From positions 124,001 to 188,000 of IMG/VR virus record IMGVR_UViG_3300034072_000926: a stretch of DNA of 64,000 nucleotides. One strand, 5' to 3'. Each line of letters starts with the position of its first letter. Position 1 is the stretch's first letter. The notes beneath the pieces are model-generated. The model made no database searches. It saw nothing but the letters and a program-made list of their open reading frames with translations, and was not told the origin of the DNA. This document shows, piece by piece, positions 45,246 to 54,630 of the stretch. The position numbers and the translations under genes were made by a program.

Positions 45246-47726
45246 TTAGACAGTTTGGTCTGCTACTCGACGAGTGTTCTTATTACCCTCTTCTAGTAGT
45301 CGACCAAGACGATCATTCATGCTGCGAATAGCTGCAATCTCTTCACGCATCAGTTCAGTCTGCTTTTCTGCTTGGTCCTTTATGACCTTCAAGTGGTTTG
45401 CAGAACGATCGCTATGTTCCATGATACGGCTTGTCATCTGGTCCACAGACATAGTATTCCTACCCCTCTGAGCGGGTGTAGCGTTGGCAGGCGCATTGTT
45501 GTTACGCTGAGTAGCCTGCTGTGCTGCGGCGCTCTGTGGGTTCTGCTGTTGCGGCTTACGGACCTGTTCAGGCGCCGGTGTCTTTGCAGCATTGGTTGGC
45601 TTCTTGATATCGTCTGCGCCAAAAATAGCATCTGCCAATAGATCACCAGCTTTGTAACCGGCCATACCGCCTGCGACGCCAGTTGCTGCACTCGCGATAC
45701 CGCCACCAAAAATACCACCAGCGAGACCGCCGATCGCACCGCCGCCGATACGAAGTGAAGACTTGGCGGCGTTCTTCCAAGACATCTCTTTGTTACCAGT
45801 TAGATAATCCAAGCCTTCGAACATACCACCAACGAGCGCGTTCTTACCAAGAGCCTTATATGGAATGGCTTTGAGTAAGCCACCGGCGCTGCCTAGAGCC
45901 CCTCGTCCACCCTTCATCAACTGGCTCAAAATGGTATTACCTGCGCCAGTTCCTGCTCCGCCTGCACCTGCCGGCGGAAGCCCTCGTTGAGCGCGGATAA
46001 TGTCTGTTGCACTAGCAGGAGCGCCTCGACCCAATGCACCCGCTGCTCCGGCACCAGCTGCACCCCGACCTGCTGCGCCTGCGGCTCCACGACCCAAACC
46101 TGCTAATGCAGCACCGTTTCGGCCCATCTTAATAGCACCAAGAGTAAGGGCAAGAGCACCAAGACCCAAACCAACATTAGATACAATGCTTGGCCACTTC
46201 TGTAAGCCATTGATTGCATCATTGATACTCCTGATACCATTGATCAGAGAGTTTGTCATTTCGCCGATCTTCACACCATAGTTGGTTAGAATCGAATTAG
46301 CCAAAGTATCAAGAGCACTGTTGACCGCCGCCACAGCTTCGCGGTCAATCATTTCCTTGTCAAGAACAGGAGCAGCGGTCGGATCTGCTTTCTTGTTCGG
46401 ATCAAGATTGGCACGGAAAATACCACCCTGATTGAAAGTCTGAACAGCTTCCTGATAACCAGAACTTAGAGAGTCTGAGCCGCCAATAGCCAACCTAGTC
46501 AGCATATTGCGTCTTGGATCTGCCCTCATACGATCAGCGGCAGCATTTGCTTGAGCACCTAGTGTCCTAGCATCAATAGCATTACCAGTTTTAACCTGAT
46601 TAGCAATGTTCTCAAGAAGCTTTGCCATTTCAGGATTGATAGCTGCAATTTCAGCTGAACGCTTAGTTGTAATTGCACCATTGGCAATAAACTCCTTGAG
46701 CATCTGCTGACCAGCATCACCAAATTGCTTACCTGCTAGTCCTAGAGCAGAATCAAGCGCATTCTTATTCAGATTCATTGTCTGAATCAATGCTGTTAGA
46801 TTCGCATCAGCGGCGCTATTCTTAGCAGCTTCCAATGCTTCCTTACGGGTCATACCGAGGATGTGAGCCGTCTCGTCACTAGATGCAACCAACTGTTCAA
46901 TACCACTTGCCATCTGACGAGTAGTTAGATTCTGTAGATTACCCTGCTTGCCCGCGATGTCAACGAAAGCAGCAATTGCATCCTGACGACCTTCAAAGCT
47001 CACACCAAGCTCACGAGTTAGCTTTGCAGAGGTATTGAGAGTCTGAGTCAGAGATGCCCACTTCATGGCACCTAGCTTCCTCGCAGACTCTGAACCCTGA
47101 TCCATTGCCAAAGCGAGTTCACGAGTGCTCATTGCCGCAGAGTTAGCAGCATTGTTCATCTGCTGGATAGAACCAACAGATCCCTCAGATGCCATTAGGG
47201 TGCGGTAGTCTTCGGCCTTATCATCGATGTAGCCATTGATCTTATCAAACGCGCCGCCGAAGAGCGCGCCCATACCACCAAGGATACCGCCACTCTTAAT
47301 GGAACTGAAGAAGCCATCCATCTTCTTCGTGCCATCACTCAGCTTATTGGAGAATGAGTCTAGTCGCTGACCAAATGTCCTCGAGTAGCCACCTAGTTCA
47401 TCATTATACGCCTTGATGTCGTTCTGAGCATCTTGGAGTTCTTTGATGATAGTGCCACGAGGTTGCTGTCCGCCGACAGACTTCTGTTCACGAACTTCTT
47501 TGAAAGGATCTTCGGTGCGCCACTGACGCCAAAACTCGTCAATGAACTTCTTTGGCTCAACTGGCTTTGTGGGATCTTTGTTGTCCATCTGCCTGCCGAG
47601 GGCAGACATAATGGTGCGAATCTTGGCAAGCTCAGTGTTAGTGAGCTGGTCACCCTTCGTCTTGTCTAGTCGATCTCCAAGGTTTTCGAACAGCGTCTTA
47701 AGTTGTTCGATATCAAAATCAGCCAT
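45246..47726 (-). CDS. Tape-measure-like protein
   Basis: Long Ala/Gly-rich helical protein with hydrophobic GxxxG segments; start MADFDIE after AGGGGAG; TAAATA at 47749-47754. Confidence 0.6.
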   Translation of the reverse strand: MADFDIEQLKTLFENLGDRLDKTKGDQLTNTELAKIRTIMSALGRQMDNKDPTKPVEPKKFIDEFWRQWRTEDPFKEVREQKSVGGQQPRGTIIKELQDAQNDIKAYNDELGGYSRTFGQRLDSFSNKLSDGTKKMDGFFSSIKSGGILGGMGALFGGAFDKINGYIDDKAEDYRTLMASEGSVGSIQQMNNAANSAAMSTRELALAMDQGSESARKLGAMKWASLTQTLNTSAKLTRELGVSFEGRQDAIAAFVDIAGKQGNLQNLTTRQMASGIEQLVASSDETAHILGMTRKEALEAAKNSAADANLTALIQTMNLNKNALDSALGLAGKQFGDAGQQMLKEFIANGAITTKRSAEIAAINPEMAKLLENIANQVKTGNAIDARTLGAQANAAADRMRADPRRNMLTRLAIGGSDSLSSGYQEAVQTFNQGGIFRANLDPNKKADPTAAPVLDKEMIDREAVAAVNSALDTLANSILTNYGVKIGEMTNSLINGIRSINDAINGLQKWPSIVSNVGLGLGALALTLGAIKMGRNGAALAGLGRGAAGAAGRGAAGAGAAGALGRGAPASATDIIRAQRGLPPAGAGGAGTGAGNTILSQLMKGGRGALGSAGGLLKAIPYKALGKNALVGGMFEGLDYLTGNKEMSWKNAAKSSLRIGGGAIGGLAGGIFGGGIASAATGVAGGMAGYKAGDLLADAIFGADDIKKPTNAAKTPAPEQVRKPQQQNPQSAAAQQATQRNNNAPANATPAQRGRNTMSVDQMTSRIMEHSDRSANHLKVIKDQAEKQTELMREEIAAIRSMNDRLGRLLEEGNKNTRRVADQTV

Positions 47727-48663: not shown

Positions 48664-48882
48664 TTGAGCACTCCAGCTGAAGAGGTCATGGATTTACTTC
48701 AGGAGTATGCGGACGAGGCAAGAGCCCTTGAGAAAAGCCTGATTAGAATCGCCTGGTATATGAGAGGATCAGTTGATCTCGATGCTGCGTATAGGATGAC
48801 ATACCGTCAAAGGAAGATGTCGATGGCTTTGATTGAAGAGAACCTAGATAATACCAGCAAGACCGGTATTATGATGCATTAA
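48664..48882 (+). CDS. Baseplate hub assembly protein, gp51-like
   Basis: AWYMRGSVDLDAAYRMT motif; follows the gp26-like gene. Confidence 0.55.
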   Translation: MSTPAEEVMDLLQEYADEARALEKSLIRIAWYMRGSVDLDAAYRMTYRQRKMSMALIEENLDNTSKTGIMMH

Positions 48883-49259
48883 AGGGCACCATGCTCTAGG
48901 TAGATACCGGCAAGATTGGAATCGCGAAGAACATGCCTAAACTCAAGTTCAATACCCTGCGAGAGTTGCTTGAACTGTTCGAAAAGGGTGGCAAGCACCT
49001 GGTTATTGATCTTCCAAAGACCCTGCGCCTGGTTGATAGCCAACTTGCTATCACCGATGATGACACACTTCTGAATGCCATTATCCTTGGCCCAGACGAC
49101 TGCCCAGATCAAAGCTGACCATTCCGCAATATTGTTGGTCCCCTGGCCGAGGTTCTTCATTGTAAGAGCTTCGGCCTTTTCATTTGGCCTGCAGATTACA
49201 ATGCAGGAACTCATCTTCCCTGGGTTGGGCGCACATCCGCCGTCAAAGTAAATTTCCAT
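48879..49259 (-). CDS. Ribonuclease HI
   Basis: YFDGG..PNPG, TNNIAEWSAL, IGDSKL, RHVLRDSNLA. Confidence 0.88.
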   Translation of the reverse strand: MEIYFDGGCAPNPGKMSSCIVICRPNEKAEALTMKNLGQGTNNIAEWSALIWAVVWAKDNGIQKCVIIGDSKLAINQAQGLWKINNQVLATLFEQFKQLSQGIELEFRHVLRDSNLAGIYLEHGAL

Positions 49260-49295
49260 ATCGCAAACTTAACATCCTGACTAAAAAAGTCAATC

Positions 49296-50412
49296 AGTCG
49301 TAATGCTTCCAGCCGTTATGAATTTGTATGATTCGATCTACAATCGCCTACAGCTTTGCTGTAGGGACTACGGTGTTTATCCATGTTGGACAAGCCAACA
49401 TGTCTGCACACCTTCGCATTTACCTTCGGTTGAACGCTAGAACTTAAAATAGATTATATGGTCATATCATGAAACATAATGCGATTGATATGGGTTCTAA
49501 GAACTCAGGACATATATGTGATGTAAAATAAGTGCTCAGGTTCCCTGAAGCACTTCGGACTTGCGTCGCAGAGCAAGCAAGGCCGTTTAATTTGTAAGTA
49601 ATATTCTATAATCTTCCAGTCACACTGACTTCCCCCGTTCCCGGGAGAAGGTCAAAAAATATATGAAATGTTTGTATTTTCACAATATGACTGGTGTGGA
49701 CAATTCGAAGGATCCTAGGTCTGCCATTATATCCTGCACCTTTTCAGTGCTCATTGCCGCTTCTTTGATACTAACCCACCAGCTGGTGTAGCTTTCTCTA
49801 CAGGACGGTCTGAAGGTCGTAACACCTTCAACTCAACGCTTCCTTTGCTCACACCAGCGGCTCAGGAAGCTTGCTTTCTACTTTTCATAGAAAGTCTAGT
49901 CTTTGACTAGGGCATCCCACTGTTTGGTTCAGTTCGGGATCTACCTAGGTTTCCGCGGTTGAAAATTACCACTTACCAAATCAGATCTACTGATTCGTTA
50001 AGCCCGCTCGGGGTTTGAAATAGTTTAGAAAGCCACTCCTAAAACTTCTTCCACTTTCCCGACCCTAGCCGCGCCCAAATCCGCGGGGAGGGGGTTAGAG
50101 GGCATGATCTGCCAACTCATGTGCTTTTTACATATGTTGCCAACCAACGGCGGGATAAATACATATGCCACAAAGCGTTTATTAAATTTGGGTTTGGTGT
50201 TTGTATCTGTGGGGATATAAAGAGGTCTAAATTTTGCGCTGTATGCCCGGGTTGGAGACTTATACTCCTCCCGGGCTATTTTTATGGTTTGTAAAAGCTA
50301 TAAAGTAGAATCTGCATTCCGTTAAGGATATTTATAAGCAGACTTAATCGTCAAAACGATTACGAATCAGCTACATCTGATTTCGATCTAGGAGCCAGAA
50401 AAACTGGCTCCT
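49296..50412 (-). ncRNA. Unclassified large structured non-coding region (ncRNA and/or replication origin)
   Basis: About 1.1 kb with no ORF of 60 aa or more; more than 10 inverted repeats; TATAAATA on the minus strand at 50329-50336 and TAAATA on the plus strand at 50156-50161. Confidence 0.5.
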
Positions 50413-50417
50413 TTAAC

Positions 50418-51245
50418 TTAATACGACTTTCTCTTCGCAATTGCAAATATTTGTCCAGTCTTTGGACGATCAACATCTGCATAACGGATCAAATAGGGTG
50501 TCTGACTGTTGCGGATTTCACACACCCAAGGAGTAGACGCGATTGCTTCAACGCCACCCTGCTGATGCAACAGTAGGAAGTTCCAGTGGTTGTTGGATTC
50601 CAGATTGTAACCGTCGATGACCAGAGGGTTTTCGGAATATGGATGATAGATGTGAGTCTGATCCTTGGACTCGATAAAGCGAACATCGTTGAGGATGCTG
50701 CGAGGCATCTGAAGATGACGCTTCGTCACCATATCATGCTGGACCAGAAGGTCGATTGGCTTGCTGTAGAGATCCTGCTCGCCGAACGCATCTTCATTGC
50801 GCTTGATCAGCTTACCTGATTGTTCCTTGTAGAACTCGAGAATCAAGGTCGCCATATACTTGCGAACAGTAGGATGGATGAGAGCAGGAGAACCGGCGAC
50901 GCTCATAATGTTGAACATGCGCTCGTTGAGGAAACGTTCACCCTTAGTATCGCGTCCGAGAAGCATCTTGCGGTGAGGTTCGAGATCACTGGGAAGAGGA
51001 GCATCTTCCTTGGCACGTTCATAGGGCTTCAAAGAATGACCACCGTAGGCCAACGCAGACCACAGGTTTTCCCAATCCTTATGGAGGGCTAAGAGCGTCT
51101 CAGGGAATGTGCGAGCACGAGGTCCGAGACCTTCGACCAGAGCATTATAGTAGCCCAGCTCTTGCTTCATGAATTCTTTGAAGCGGATTTTGTCTGTTGG
51201 ATGGACATCGACCATCTCAATAATTTCTCGGAATCGCGTCTGCAT
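50418..51245 (-). CDS. TnpB/Cas12-like WED-REC protein apparently lacking RuvC
   Basis: VHPTDKIRFKEFMKQELGYYNAL resembles the TnpB motif LYPTxxQxxxLxxxxGxxRxxYN; IHPTVRKYMATLILEFYK resembles SQxLQQxLxDLxxAFK; no IGIDLG RuvC-I motif. Confidence 0.4.
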   Translation of the reverse strand: MQTRFREIIEMVDVHPTDKIRFKEFMKQELGYYNALVEGLGPRARTFPETLLALHKDWENLWSALAYGGHSLKPYERAKEDAPLPSDLEPHRKMLLGRDTKGERFLNERMFNIMSVAGSPALIHPTVRKYMATLILEFYKEQSGKLIKRNEDAFGEQDLYSKPIDLLVQHDMVTKRHLQMPRSILNDVRFIESKDQTHIYHPYSENPLVIDGYNLESNNHWNFLLLHQQGGVEAIASTPWVCEIRNSQTPYLIRYADVDRPKTGQIFAIAKRKSY

Positions 51246-51328
51246 ATATGCTCCTTTGTGTAAGGCTTATCATGCTGCAAAGCGGTCACCTATGTCACTA
51301 AATATCAGACTATAATTAGGAGACCATA

Positions 51329-51868
51329 ATGACCTCTAAGGCCAAAGCCAAGGGAAACGCTTGGGAACTAGCGATTTGTAAGTTCCTCGGTGAAACTCTG
51401 GGCGGAAATTTCCAGCGCGTTCCCAACTCGGGTGCATACATGGGCGGTAAGAACTCCTACCGTAAAGAATACCTCAGTGACACTCAGCAGCGCGCTGCGA
51501 AGGGCGATATCATCCCACCTGATGATTTGCCAAAGCTGAACATCGAAGCGAAGAACTACGCTGATATCGCGTTCCATCAGATCATTGATGGCAATTGCAA
51601 ACAGCTTGACGGATGGATTGATCAGACTGAAGAACCCGCCGATGCTGATGATTTCTCGCTGACAATTTTCAAGATCACCCGTAAGGGCAGCTGGGTAGCA
51701 TTCAAGACTGAATTCCAGGATAAGGTCGATCTAACTGGACTTTCTTATGTGATCTACCGCAAGGCATTCGGCACTGAAAAAGCCTGCGATTATGTGATTG
51801 TTTCGCACGAACCGTTCTTTACTCAGAACAAGGGTGCTGTTCGTAAGCTAGGTGGTGCAGATAATTGA
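51329..51868 (+). CDS. Holliday junction resolvase, Hjc-type PD-(D/E)XK
   Basis: KAKGNAWE, RVPNSGAY, GDIIPP, IEAKNY; TAAATA at 51299-51304. Confidence 0.8.
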   Translation: MTSKAKAKGNAWELAICKFLGETLGGNFQRVPNSGAYMGGKNSYRKEYLSDTQQRAAKGDIIPPDDLPKLNIEAKNYADIAFHQIIDGNCKQLDGWIDQTEEPADADDFSLTIFKITRKGSWVAFKTEFQDKVDLTGLSYVIYRKAFGTEKACDYVIVSHEPFFTQNKGAVRKLGGADN

Positions 51869-52840: not shown

Positions 52841-53113
52841 TCAAAGGAAATAAAGCTTGAACATGATAGCCTTCAGCCTGGGACAGCGGATAGCATAATC
52901 GGGCTGGATGTTTCCACCACCCCTTGAGATCATAACGATCTTCCAGTCTGTTCCCTCTGCGCCGATTGTTTCTTCACTCCATATCCTGAAACGCCTACGA
53001 AGTGTGGGTCGTCGTCGCGCTTTCCGCTTTGCCGTAGAATCAGTCGGAGGGAACCATGTCAAGATGGCTTTATGTTTGGAGGCAGGTATAATGAGATCAA
53101 CCGAGTCGACCAT
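52841..53113 (-). CDS. Small-protein family member
   Basis: Probable start MVDSVDL; ends AIMFKLYFL. Confidence 0.55.
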   Translation of the reverse strand: MVDSVDLIIPASKHKAILTWFPPTDSTAKRKARRRPTLRRRFRIWSEETIGAEGTDWKIVMISRGGGNIQPDYAIRCPRLKAIMFKLYFL

Positions 53114-53327
53114 GCCATGACATCTTGAATAGAATGAAATCTTTGGTCTCTCGGAAACAAATCCATTTCTGATGGCGTTCATCAGATATCGCAGTCCAAC
53201 GCCATTTGCCCGATGAAACACTCATATCTCTCTGGCCTAGCGTTGTATTCAGCCAGGCAAACATTTCGCTATAGAGATCATCCTCTAAGAACGTATCAAA
53301 GGGATAGCGGTGTTTCCAGCCTGACAT
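53097..53327 (-). CDS. Small-protein family member
   Basis: WICFRETKDFILFKMSW. Confidence 0.65.
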   Translation of the reverse strand: MSGWKHRYPFDTFLEDDLYSEMFAWLNTTLGQRDMSVSSGKWRWTAISDERHQKWICFRETKDFILFKMSWHGRLG

Positions 53328-53346: not shown

Positions 53347-53553
53347 TTAGAGCCAAGTCAACTTGAACAACATGGCATCAGACTCTTTCTCGAAATAGAT
53401 ATAATCCTGTCCATCTATGGTTGTGATGGAATGTCTGATACCTTTGGTGGAGAACCAAGTATGAATCTCTTTCTTGAGGACGCACTTATAGCGACCCCTA
53501 ATGACTTGCCATTCCCACATCTCTAAATTCTTAATAGGTAGGATCATAGCCAC
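53347..53553 (-). CDS. Small-protein family member
   Basis: YIYFEKESDAMLFKLTWL. Confidence 0.7.
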   Translation of the reverse strand: MAMILPIKNLEMWEWQVIRGRYKCVLKKEIHTWFSTKGIRHSITTIDGQDYIYFEKESDAMLFKLTWL

Positions 53554-53777
53554 TCTAATTTGAAACGGATTGCATCAGCACGTCTGGCAAAATACACAAC
53601 CGTCTCACCTTCTTCAATATAATGATCCCAACACCAACGATCACAACCAAGAGCTGAACCCATAGTATCATGAGCCCATAGTCTGAAATCGGTTGATAGG
53701 ACAAGATCAAATGAAGACTTACTGAAAACGCCAGCCTTCATCCAAGCAGAACGAGTGCTATGAACGGCGATCAACGA
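53544..53777 (-). CDS. Small-protein family member (start uncertain)
   Basis: [18 protein letters not shown]; the N-terminal part of the track ORF overlaps the radical SAM gene. Confidence 0.6.
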
Positions 53778-54630
53778 ACATTCCACACGAGGCTTTGACG
53801 TCGAATCCGACGCGAGGTACGATACGGCTGCTCGGATGACCGAACGCAGAGGAAAGGTAGTCGAAGTTCCGTTGCAGAACTTCCTCACTAGGTTCCTTAC
53901 CTTGAGCACTGCTGAAAGGATTGTATCGGACAAGATTGAACTTTACATCTAGGTTTCGAACCAAGATAGCCATAATGATTTCTTCGAGAGTTTCCAAGTC
54001 ATCATTCTCACCCTCAATGAAAGCCCAATGCAACGTCAGGAGTTGTCCTGTCTTCTGTTGCCATTCGACCATCTTCCAAAGAGCTTCATGAGGGTTCATG
54101 GCCTTTGGTAGCCAACGCTTGCGGAAGTGTTCCTTGAGGCTATAGAGGGAGTAATAGATCTGAGCACCCGAGTCTCCAAAAACGTCATAGAGTGAACGTT
54201 CTTCCATCTCCTCGGGCATAATCGTGCTGATGTTATATTTGGCCACTAACGCATGTTGTTCTGCAATGCCCTGTAAGGGTTTCTTAACGCCCTCCCAGTC
54301 ATTTAGCACGTTGGGGTTAGCAAGCGGTTCGCCGCGCGCCATGAAGTTGTAGTTAACCCTGTGGGCATCATCGATCTCTCGATAATGACGGAACACCTGC
54401 AAGGCTTGGAGTTCATATTCCTCCTTGCTTGCAGGTGTCATCATAGTCTGACGAGTTTGCGTCAGATGACAAAAACGACAAGCCTTATTACAGCCGGAAT
54501 GACTCGATAGATAGGCGATGAAGTAATCTTGCTCACGCCTAACATAACGAGCTTCGAGTGCCCCACCATCTTGATGAGGCACCACGAAGTTAACACTCGA
54601 GTCTTCCGAACTGTATAGGACTTCAGTCAT
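53758..54630 (-). CDS. RlmN/Cfr-like radical SAM enzyme
   Basis: [13 protein letters not shown] (CxxxCxxC), [30 protein letters not shown]. Confidence 0.82.

What the first reader, a model, noticed from the sequence alone, without database searches (positions are those of the whole stretch)
50418..51245. TnpB/Cas12-like protein that appears to keep WED/REC but lack RuvC
Seen: the spacing of motifs parallels the N-terminal half of IS200/IS605 TnpB (HPT-x-helix-YYNAL; IHPTVRKYMATLILEFYK; KRHLQMP; a beta-rich run ending WVCEI). The protein ends at 275 aa with no RuvC D-E-D motifs, and no transposase or transposon ends are visible. Known: TnpB binds an RNA encoded at or after its 3' end, and RuvC-dead TldR derivatives act as RNA-guided regulators. 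Inference: a domesticated, nuclease-free RNA-guided binder whose RNA is the structured region just downstream on the same strand. The divergent Hjc-type nuclease could act in trans. The similarity is remote and judged by eye.
Basis: inference. Interest (0 to 1): 0.78.

Follow-up and report, generated by a model that had tools for sequence, protein, structure and literature searches.

The report
Nuclease-less TnpB/Cas12-like phage protein
A conserved giant-phage gene encodes only the nucleic-acid-recognising half of the TnpB/Cas12 family and none of the cutting half; it sits next to a large structured RNA, but nothing here shows the two work together.

Summary
The ORF at 50418-51245 (-) is a real 275-aa gene under strong purifying selection. 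It has at least 187 family clusters (50% identity), all about 220-345 aa, seen in uncultivated T4-like jumbo phages.

No sequence method names it. Two AlphaFold models (pLDDT 84 and 94) show a seven-stranded beta-barrel with a helical bundle inserted after strand 1. In a Foldseek-independent PDB search, the top 27-28 matches are all Cas12f, TnpB, Fanzor, Cas12m/k/lambda and similar (Z up to 9.9). Every match stops where RuvC would begin. There is no RuvC, no zinc finger and no transposon context.

The downstream 0.9 kb is a real covarying structured RNA with an EGFOA-like domain (37.5 bits; threshold 37.7). Its core is separable from the protein:
- Sinorhizobium phage Phosso and one 480-kb contig carry the RNA plus RNase HI without the gene.
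- Three relatives carry the gene without the RNA.
- Only a roughly 170-nt five-hairpin module directly after the stop codon is specifically linked to the gene.

RNA guidance and a trans-acting nuclease remain untested. The PDDEXK neighbour also occurs without the protein.

Verdict: a new RuvC-less variant of a known kind, interpretation partly supported.

The parts
50418..51245 (-). 275-aa protein made of only a TnpB/Cas12-type REC lobe. WED barrel strands lie at residues 8-12 and 177-245. The REC helical insertion spans residues 16-152, and a short C-terminal helix spans 262-271.
   Evidence: pLDDT 84.4 and 94.3; top 27-28 rows all Cas12/TnpB/Fanzor, Z up to 9.9. Searches agree. Purifying selection.
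50390..50412 (-). H1: hairpin 5 nt after the stop codon. Its sequence varies between relatives but the stem is kept. It has no U-tract.
   Evidence: Alignments A5, A6 and A8; MFE fold.
50363..50385 (-). H2: near-invariant hairpin (stem UCAG/CUGA, loop AUGUAG) preceded by AGAUCG. It is unique in the window. Every true copy found lies about 30-50 nt after the stop codon of a family gene.
50345..50362 (-). H3: hairpin of variable sequence.
50309..50344 (-). H4: hairpin carrying the conserved UAAAUA in its loop. The TATAAATA here is the only copy in 64 kb, so it is not a general late promoter.
50298..50308 (-). Conserved single-stranded block CUACUUUAUAG.
50246..50276 (-). H5: two-tier CCCGGG hairpin with many compensatory changes.
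   Evidence: 11 pairs, most covarying.
49610..50160 (-). Core structured RNA (class A), a multi-helix domain closed by a long-range helix. It is also present in phages that lack the protein gene.
   Evidence: (61 pairs, 23 compensatory).
49697..49792 (-). EGFOA-like domain (RF02955) inside the core RNA.
   Evidence: 37.5 bits against a gathering score of 37.7. Scores are 33.9-37.1 bits at the same relative place in five relatives.
49535..49549 (-). Terminator-like hairpin followed by a U-rich tail; probable 3' end of the non-coding transcript.
   Evidence: The stem is also conserved in L006.
48879..49259 (-). RNase HI gene. It co-occurs with the RNA region, not with the protein.
   Evidence: Co-occurrence across loci.
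51329..51868 (+). Divergently transcribed PDDEXK_15 nuclease, annotated as a Holliday junction resolvase in phage Phosso.

Best explanation
The gene encodes a stand-alone REC lobe of the TnpB/Cas12 kind. This is an OB-type seven-stranded WED barrel with a helical REC bundle inserted between strands 1 and 2. The whole nuclease lobe (RuvC, TNB) is absent.

It is a fixed, non-mobile accessory gene of Atu_ph07/Phosso-related and more distant T4-like jumbo phages. It always lies between the gp46/gp47 recombination genes with a PDDEXK resolvase on one side and the baseplate-hub genes on the other.

Because it has no catalytic domain, it most likely acts as a non-cleaving nucleic-acid binder through the WED-REC cleft (inferred). 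In TnpB that cleft reads the TAM duplex, one scaffold stem and the start of the RNA-DNA heteroduplex.

My preferred ligand, at roughly 0.3, is the five-hairpin module transcribed directly after its stop codon, above all the invariant H2 hairpin. That would tether the protein to the large EGFOA-type RNA downstream.

The large RNA itself is an independent module that travels with RNase HI and does not depend on this protein (shown by co-occurrence).
For: Fold:
- The two models have pLDDT 84.4 / pTM 0.82 and pLDDT 94.3 / pTM 0.90.
- In VIA-align against 48,161 PDB chains, the top 27 and top 28 rows are all Cas12f, dCas12f, TnpB, Fanzor2, TranC, Cas12m/k/lambda/b/e/g/n/p. Z runs from 9.9 to 5.6, and the first unrelated row is at 5.2-5.4.
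- Model residues 2-246 align to ISDra2 TnpB residues 1-173 at rmsd 3.7 A over 162 aa.
- Those TnpB residues are exactly WED plus REC as defined in PMC10097598.
- Foldseek against PDB, AFDB clusters, BFVD and the ESM Atlas all converge on TnpB/Cas12/Fanzor and on PF12323/PF01385/PF07282 clusters.

Real, selected family:
-.

Fixed locus:
-.

Link to the 5' module:
- H2 is found only after this gene, in at least 15 distinct loci spanning about 35-100% protein identity.
- It is missing from Phosso and L143, which keep the core RNA but lack the gene.

RNA independence:
- RNA without the gene; gene without the RNA.
Against: - No sequence-level homology to TnpB/Cas12 is detectable: Pfam at E<=1 for 58 members, and a PDB profile search at E<=10. 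Common ancestry therefore rests on predicted structure alone.
- Z values of 9-10 are only moderately above the tool's stated background of 7-8.
- In TnpB most scaffold RNA contacts come from RuvC, so a REC lobe alone may not hold an RNA.
- Three loci have the protein with no downstream RNA at all.
- The 5' module is also absent from those protein-only loci. It could instead be a processing or insulating element needed only when the mRNA and the RNA are co-transcribed.
- No binding data exist.
- Metatranscriptome contigs cover the ORF and the RNA region at similar low depth, without strand information.
Confidence: 0.6

Rival explanations
1. One reading: an RNA-guided, nuclease-free DNA binder (TldR-like). 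Its guide RNA is encoded just downstream, and the divergent PDDEXK nuclease possibly cuts in trans.
For: - The REC-lobe fold is the part of TnpB that reads the TAM and the seed heteroduplex.
- A structured RNA lies on the same strand directly after the gene, with a strictly linked conserved module.
- PDDEXK_15 is the divergent neighbour in all nine loci that have enough flank to judge.
- dCas12f and TldR are precedents for nuclease-dead, RNA-guided regulators.
Against: - No unstructured variable segment behaves like a guide.
- The only 15-nt match in the 64-kb window lies in a conserved scaffold block and is at chance level.
- No Rfam omega-RNA-type family matches.
- Known dead derivatives keep the RuvC fold that holds the scaffold.
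- The gene exists without any downstream RNA in three loci.
- PDDEXK_15 exists without the gene in Phosso and L143, so the pairing may be plain synteny.
Confidence: 0.18
2. A guide-independent DNA (or branched-DNA) binding protein of the phage recombination and replication module. It would use the TAM-reading WED-REC surface as an ordinary sequence- or structure-specific DNA-binding domain. The adjacent RNA would be unrelated to its function.
For: - It has a constant position beside gp47/gp46 (Mre11/SbcC-like) and a resolvase-type nuclease.
- Family members exist with no RNA region.
- In TnpB, TAM duplex recognition is carried out entirely by REC and WED residues.
Against: - It does not explain why the invariant H2 module exists only next to this gene.
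- The gene is dispensable in the closest cultured relatives (Phosso, Atu_ph07), so it is not a core replication factor.
Confidence: 0.27
3. An R-loop module. The long structured transcript plus RNase HI would form a ColE1- or T4 ori(uvsY)-like priming or regulatory R-loop, and the REC-lobe protein would bind or stabilise the RNA-DNA hybrid.
For: - The RNA region co-occurs with RNase HI in 8 of 9 loci that carry the RNA, and RNase HI is absent from all 3 loci without it.
- REC lobes cradle RNA-DNA heteroduplexes in TnpB/Cas12.
- The locus lies beside baseplate-hub genes, as T4 ori(uvsY) does (my own knowledge of T4, not tested here).
Against: - Purely positional: there is no replication data and no skew signal attributable to an origin.
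- Phosso manages with the RNA and RNase HI but no such protein.
Confidence: 0.08
4. A decaying, truncated TnpB pseudogene, or a chance structural look-alike with no nucleic-acid role.
For: - Short N-terminal-only TnpB fragments exist in databases (AFDB and Atlas hits of 194-263 aa carrying PF12323).
- Sequence identity to every structural match is only 4-11%.
Against: - There are 187 clusters of uniform length.
- dN/dS is about 0.1 or less, with saturated synonymous sites.
- About ten positions are nearly invariant across the whole family: E29, N34, Q142, K175, R176, H177, Q179, W221, W240 and Y251.
- 28 of the 28 top structural hits come from one superfamily and cover residues 2-247.
Confidence: 0.04

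Closest known systems
ISDra2 TnpB (IS200/IS605 OrfB; PDB 8H1J/8EXA)
   Same: Seven-stranded WED barrel with a REC helical bundle inserted between beta1 and beta2. Model residues 2-246 superpose on TnpB residues 1-173 (Z 9.4, rmsd 3.7 A). A structured RNA is encoded at the 3' side of the gene on the same strand.
   Different: No RuvC, TNB or C-terminal domain. The REC insertion is longer (about 135 aa against about 104 aa). There is no detectable sequence similarity, no TnpA and no transposon ends. It is a single fixed locus, and the RNA matches no known omega-RNA family.
TldR and dCas12f-sigmaE (exapted nuclease-dead TnpB/Cas12f; PMC10705468, PMC13472631, PDB 9N9C)
   Same: Immobilised, non-cleaving relatives of TnpB/Cas12f, some of them phage-encoded. 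dCas12f gives Z 9.5 over its residues 3-211.
   Different: Those proteins keep the RuvC fold, with mutated residues or loss of RuvC-III only, and they have demonstrated guide RNAs. Here the entire NUC lobe is gone and no guide is known.
Cas12f / Fanzor2 / Cas12m / Cas12k REC lobes
   Same: Same REC-lobe architecture (Z 8-9.9).
   Different: Those are full-length effectors with a RuvC domain and CRISPR or omega-type RNAs. Cas12f also has a zinc-finger insertion that is absent here.
EGFOA RNA (Rfam RF02955)
   Same: The domain at 49697-49792 aligns to all 108 model positions and shares the conserved AGACCU.GG loop. Like EGFOA, it lies in an unusually large gene-free region (bioRxiv 10.64898/2026.07.01.735769).
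   Different: It scores just under the gathering threshold (37.5 against 37.7). It is embedded in a larger RNA of about 550 nt closed by a long-range helix.
Sinorhizobium phage Phosso / Agrobacterium phage Atu_ph07 (closest cultured phages)
   Same: Portal identity of 59% and 54%. Phosso shares the order Mre11 - SbcC - PDDEXK | RNA | RNase HI - hub - tape measure - portal, and it shares the core RNA.
   Different: Neither encodes the 275-aa protein or the H1-H5 module.

Membership tests
TnpB/Cas12 superfamily (RNA-guided nucleases) | REC lobe: seven-stranded OB-type WED barrel with a helical REC domain inserted between beta1 and beta2. | tested here: met
   Predicted topology. Structural matches. 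Definition taken from PMC10097598. The test rests on predicted structure only.
TnpB/Cas12 superfamily (RNA-guided nucleases) | RuvC (RNase H-fold) domain carrying the D-E-D triad. | tested here: not met
   The protein ends about 30 residues after the last WED strand. The top matches (Z 8.4 and above) to TnpB, Cas12f, dCas12f and Fanzor2 stop at the end of the target's WED domain (TnpB residues 173-176). A few lower, high-rmsd matches to larger Cas12 enzymes run further into the chain.
TnpB/Cas12 superfamily (RNA-guided nucleases) | TNB / zinc-finger domain (CxxC pairs). | tested here: not met
   There is a single cysteine in the 275 aa.
TnpB/Cas12 superfamily (RNA-guided nucleases) | Sequence-profile membership (PF12323, PF01385, PF07282). 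| tested here: not met
   No hit at E<=1 for the protein or for any of 58 diverse members. The PDB profile search is empty at E<=10.
TnpB/Cas12 superfamily (RNA-guided nucleases) | Cognate omega/re-RNA at the 3' end of the gene, ending in a guide. | tested here: inconclusive
   A linked structured module follows the stop codon. However, there is no Rfam omega-RNA match and no guide-like match in the window. The RNA is absent from three family loci.
IS200/IS605-IS607 transposon | TnpA, left and right ends, and multiple or mobile copies. | tested here: not met
   The gene occupies the same syntenic slot in all loci, with no transposase nearby.
TldR (TnpB-like nuclease-dead repressor) | Retained but inactivated RuvC fold, plus a guide RNA complementary to a promoter. 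| tested here: not met
   The RuvC fold is absent. Guide and target could not be tested without the host genome and the full phage genome.
EGFOA RNA (RF02955) | Covariance-model score at or above the gathering score of 37.7 bits. | tested here: not met
   The window scores 37.5 bits. Five relatives score 33.9-37.1 bits at the orthologous place. This is narrowly below threshold but consistent across loci.
EGFOA RNA (RF02955) | Outer helix enclosing two hairpins, with the conserved AGACCU.GG loop, located in a large gene-free region. | tested here: met
   Alignment to all 108 model positions; the pairs are kept with compensatory changes.
PDDEXK_15 (neighbouring gene 51329-51868) | Pfam PF24608 match above its cut-off. 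| tested here: met
   83.5 bits against a cut-off of 27.

The most novel reading that the evidence does not exclude
A REC-lobe-only descendant, or ancestor-like relative, of TnpB works as a ribonucleoprotein with the adjacent EGFOA-type RNA. It would either be a guide-directed DNA binder that has outsourced or abandoned cleavage, or an R-loop reader acting together with the linked RNase HI at a phage origin or regulatory site. This would be the first RNA-associated TnpB/Cas12 relative that lacks the nuclease lobe altogether. It would also give the orphan EGFOA RNAs their first protein partner and function.
Probability: 0.15. Interest if true: 0.9.

Novelty: new variant of a known kind. Interest (0 to 1): 0.62.

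Why it matters
All characterised TnpB/Cas12 derivatives, including the 'dead' ones (TldR, dCas12f-sigmaE, Cas12k, Cas12m), keep the RuvC fold. That fold also holds most of the RNA scaffold.

A large, strongly conserved family made of the REC lobe alone raises three questions:
- Can this lobe function by itself, as a TAM-type DNA reader, a hairpin binder or a heteroduplex binder?
- Is it a reduction product, or a relic of the module that fused with RuvC to make TnpB?
- Can it serve as a very small (275 aa) programmable or sequence-specific binding scaffold?

Separately, the work places an EGFOA-type RNA in a defined gene neighbourhood (RNase HI and recombination genes) and in a cultured phage, Sinorhizobium phage Phosso. 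That makes this orphan RNA class experimentally approachable.

Tried and rejected
- **Sequence annotation led nowhere.** Pfam, PHROGs, NCBIfam and PADLOC gave nothing for the protein. Neither did the PDB profile search, the Pfam scan of 58 members, or tblastn of three family members against 50,697 phage records. The Atlas feature search returned only unnamed viral clusters.
- **Collecting distant contexts was difficult.**
  - Alignments A3 and A4 were too diverse for the search for related loci.
  - Three single-protein scans of IMG/VR found nothing.
  - Several representatives sit on contigs of 1-3 kb.
- **The short-motif scan was noisy.** The 15-nt H2 pattern gave mostly chance hits, which I filtered with the extended motif and an HMM of the family.
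- **TATAAATA as a T4-type late promoter: rejected.** It is the only copy in 64 kb of mostly structural genes, and it lies in the loop of a covarying hairpin.
- **H1 as an intrinsic terminator: rejected.** It has no U-tract.
- **Guide-target search gave nothing significant.** One 15-mer (49746-49760 = 47124-47138) lies in a conserved scaffold block, and about 0.14 such matches are expected by chance.
- **RNA-seq was uninformative.** Only assembled contigs without strand were available, at low and even depth over the ORF and the RNA, and DNA carry-over is not excluded.
- **Pseudogene reading: rejected**.
- **Obligate protein-nuclease pairing: not supported.** PDDEXK_15 occurs without the protein in Phosso and L143.
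- **Not done:**
  - Profile-profile comparison with a TnpB alignment, because no tool-derived TnpB sequences were at hand.
  - Residue-level mapping of conserved positions onto TnpB contacts.
  - Complex modelling with RNA or with PDDEXK_15.
Full report
**1. The observation**

The ORF at 50418-51245 on the - strand starts with ATG and encodes 275 aa.

It is a real gene:
- The word-indexed search found 39 homologues at 58-100% identity, almost all 264-287 aa, on metagenomic contigs of up to about 470 kb.
- An exhaustive profile search of 1.8 billion representatives found 187 clusters at E<1e-3 and 174 at E<1e-10. Lengths are about 220-345 aa apart from obvious fragments, and none has TnpB length.
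- Between orthologues, synonymous sites are saturated (pS 0.69-0.82) while pN is 0.17-0.26. The protein is therefore under strong purifying selection.
- A wide 58-member alignment keeps E29, N34, Q142, K175, R176, H177, Q179, W221, W240 and Y251.

**2. Where it lives**

The window is part of IMGVR_UViG_3300034072_000926, a contig of 465,259 bp. It is a jumbo phage with T4-type core genes: portal, gp26-like hub, tape measure and gp46/gp47-like SbcC/Mre11.

By portal protein, the nearest cultured phages are Sinorhizobium phage Phosso (59%) and Agrobacterium phage Atu_ph07 (54%).

In every locus with enough flank the gene has the same place. The order is Mre11 - x - SbcC - (radical SAM) - small ORFs - PDDEXK_15 (divergent) | this gene | ... 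gp26-like hub (opposite strand) - tape measure - portal. There is no transposase, there are no repeated ends and there is no second copy. The gene is not mobile.

**3. What the protein is**

No sequence method names it. The following all returned nothing:
- Pfam, PHROGs, NCBIfam and PADLOC
- Pfam on 58 members at E<=1
- a PDB profile search at E<=10
- tblastn of three members against 50,697 phage records

Structure prediction is confident. The close alignment gives pLDDT 84.4 / pTM 0.82, and the diverse alignment gives pLDDT 94.3 / pTM 0.90.

Both models have the same topology:
- strand 8-12
- helices spanning 16-152
- six more strands between 177 and 245
- a short terminal helix at 262-271

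That is a seven-stranded barrel with a helical bundle inserted after strand 1. The ISDra2 TnpB structure paper defines the WED domain in just this way: residues 1-12 and 117-176, a seven-stranded OB-type barrel, with REC (13-116) inserted between beta1 and beta2 (PMC10097598).

In a Foldseek-independent comparison with 48,161 PDB chains, the top 27 rows (first model) and top 28 rows (second model) all belong to one superfamily. They are AsCas12f (Z 9.9), dCas12f (9.5), ISDra2 TnpB (9.4; model 2-246 on chain 1-173, rmsd 3.7 A over 162 residues), Fanzor2 (9.3), and then TranC and Cas12m, lambda, e, b, g, n, k, p and phi. The first unrelated row is at Z 5.2-5.4.

Four other libraries give the same answer:
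- Foldseek against PDB
- AFDB clusters, where the hits are TnpB N-terminal 'HTH_OrfB_IS605' transposases with probability up to 1.0
- BFVD, which returns one family member at TM 0.74 and then giant-virus and phage TnpB/Fanzor 'transposases'
- the ESM Atlas, where the matching clusters carry PF12323, PF01385 and PF07282

The best matches (TnpB, Cas12f, dCas12f, Fanzor2) end at the last WED strand of the target, before RuvC. A few lower-ranked, high-rmsd matches to larger Cas12 enzymes extend further.

The phage protein has only about 30 more residues and a single cysteine. RuvC and the zinc-finger TNB domain are absent, not merely mutated. The Z values are moderate, and identity to all structural hits is 4-11%. 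Homology is therefore an inference from predicted structure, although a consistent one.

**4. The downstream RNA**

The 1.16 kb between the stop codon and the RNase HI gene has no conserved ORF. It keeps long invariant blocks among relatives whose synonymous sites are saturated.

*(a) A 5' module directly after the stop codon (about 50246-50412).*
- It consists of hairpin H1 (variable sequence, stem kept), H2, variable hairpin H3, H4 with UAAAUA in its loop, a CUACUUUAUAG block, and the two-tier hairpin H5.
- H2 follows AGAUCG and has a UCAG/CUGA stem with an AUGUAG loop. It is invariant except for one locus with AUUCAG.
- The MFE fold gives exactly these five hairpins with z = -4.0.
- RNAalifold finds compensatory changes in 8 of 19 pairs.
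- H2 is unique in the window.
- After filtering a noisy IMG/VR scan, every true copy lies about 30-50 nt after the stop codon of a family gene. This holds in at least 15 distinct loci, down to about 35% protein identity.

*(b) A core RNA (about 49610-50160).*
- It has a long-range helix closing a multi-branched domain. Of 61 predicted pairs, 23 show compensatory changes.
- Its 3' half aligns to all 108 positions of Rfam EGFOA at 37.5 bits against a gathering score of 37.7.
- Five relatives score 33.9-37.1 bits at the same relative place.
- A second set of relatives (L002, L008-L010, L012) carries a different core behind the same 5' module.

*(c) A terminator-like hairpin with a U-rich tail at 49535-49549.*

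EGFOA RNAs are orphan RNAs of large gene-free regions. They were recently shown to form RNA-only trimers and dimers (bioRxiv 10.64898/2026.07.01.735769).

**5. Are the protein and the RNA partners?**

The co-occurrence evidence is mixed.

| Configuration | Loci |
|---|---|
| Gene + 5' module + core + RNase HI | window, L001-L003, L016, L139, L141 |
| Gene + 5' module + core, no RNase HI called | L004 |
| Gene + RNA, flank too short to judge RNase HI | L007-L012, L086, L144 |
| Gene only, abutting the baseplate genes | L017, L140, a GCA_015689235 contig |
| Core RNA + RNase HI, no gene and no H2 | Sinorhizobium phage Phosso, L143 |

In Phosso the RNA lies in an unannotated 1,014-nt gap between the resolvase and RNase HI genes. 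L143 is a 480-kb IMG/VR contig.

The large RNA therefore travels with RNase HI and is independent of the protein. Only the 5' module is tied to the gene, and only where the core RNA follows. There are two readings of that pattern:
- The module is the protein's binding site, tethering it to the RNA.
- The module is a processing or insulating cassette, needed only when the mRNA and the RNA are co-transcribed.

No guide-like segment was found. The single 15-nt match in the window is at chance level and lies in a conserved block. No Rfam omega-RNA-type family matches. Metatranscriptome contigs from wastewater cover the ORF and the RNA at similar low depth without strand information, which shows presence at most.

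**6. The neighbouring nuclease**

The gene at 51329-51868 is a PDDEXK_15 protein (E 2e-23), annotated as a Holliday junction resolvase in Phosso. It is the divergent neighbour in all nine loci that could be judged. It is also kept in Phosso and L143, which lack the protein. The pairing can therefore be explained by conserved gene order, and a trans-nuclease role has no specific support.

**7. Mechanism**

*Shown:*
- a selected, non-mobile protein with a predicted TnpB/Cas12 REC-lobe fold and no catalytic lobe
- an adjacent covarying RNA, of which only the first hairpin module is linked to the gene

*Inferred:*
- The protein binds nucleic acid without cleaving it, through the WED-REC cleft.
- In TnpB that lobe reads the TAM duplex, one scaffold stem and the first base pairs of the heteroduplex, whereas most scaffold contacts come from RuvC.

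My weights for the main readings are:

| Reading | Weight |
|---|---|
| Binding of the linked RNA module (guided or not) | about 0.3 |
| Guide-independent DNA binding within the recombination module | about 0.27 |
| An R-loop role with RNase HI | about 0.08 |

**8. Comparison with what is known, and novelty**

The protein works like, or at least looks like, the REC lobe of TnpB/Cas12. It is not a member of the family as defined:
- RuvC, TNB, sequence-profile membership and transposon context were all tested and not met.
- The cognate-RNA criterion is inconclusive.

Literature searches found nuclease-dead derivatives that keep RuvC or lose only RuvC-III: TldR, dCas12f-sigmaE, Cas12k/m and CasMu. 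They found no report of a conserved family that lacks the whole lobe. I rate it as a new variant of a known kind. The RNA is a divergent member of a known orphan class.

**9. Verdict**

- Observation: confirmed.
- Interpretation: partly supported. The fold is supported, RNA guidance is unproven, and the large RNA is separable from the protein.
- Interest: 0.62.

Noticed in passing
L137:8127-9140 (Sinorhizobium phage Phosso PV764938, record 229759-230772): An unannotated 1,014-nt gap between the Holliday junction resolvase and RNase HI genes of a cultured phage. It contains a clear homologue of the core structured RNA, with the blocks GACCGTCCTG, CAGACCTAG and GCCGCTGG..TGAGCA. This offers an experimentally tractable host for this RNA.
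   Followed up: yes
window 53758-54630 (-): A radical SAM protein whose start overlaps the end of the SbcC-like gene. Its best NCBIfam hits are RlmN/Cfr-type RNA methyltransferases, far below their cut-offs. The gene is conserved at this place in most relatives. It may be a phage RNA-modifying enzyme.
   Followed up: partly
window 53097-53327, 53347-53553, 53544-53933 (-): Three tandem small ORFs (76, 68 and 129 aa) end in the same motif, an aromatic-rich ...(Y/C)F...(L/R)FK(L/M)xW. They look like a small paralogous family of unknown function.
   Followed up: no
L002, L008, L009, L010, L012 (downstream of the family gene): Behind the same H1-H5 module, these relatives carry a different conserved RNA core ('class B') with no EGFOA-like hit. 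It looks as if RNA cores are exchanged as cassettes.
   Followed up: partly
L014:2745-2815: In a distant family member (P0052), the gene is followed by tandem copies of an ~11-nt unit (GGCTCATACTT alternating with GTCTCATACTT) that run to the end of the contig.
   Followed up: no
L138:1892-2880 (Agrobacterium phage Atu_ph07 NC_042013, record 152997-153985): Another CDS-free gap of about 1 kb upstream of the tape-measure/portal block in Atu_ph07. It was not examined for structured RNA.
   Followed up: no
L140:4764-4975: The portal gene of this relative is called at 738 aa and has a faint intein-splicing hit, suggesting an intein in the portal gene.
   Followed up: no
window 49746-49760 and 47124-47138 (+): An identical 15-mer is shared by the EGFOA-like domain and the tape-measure gene. 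About 0.14 such matches are expected by chance, so it is probably a coincidence.
   Followed up: partly
window 49260-51300: Near-identical sequence (99% or more) occurs in subsurface, soil, wastewater and indoor metagenomes and in wastewater metatranscriptomes. The phage lineage is therefore widespread.
   Followed up: partly
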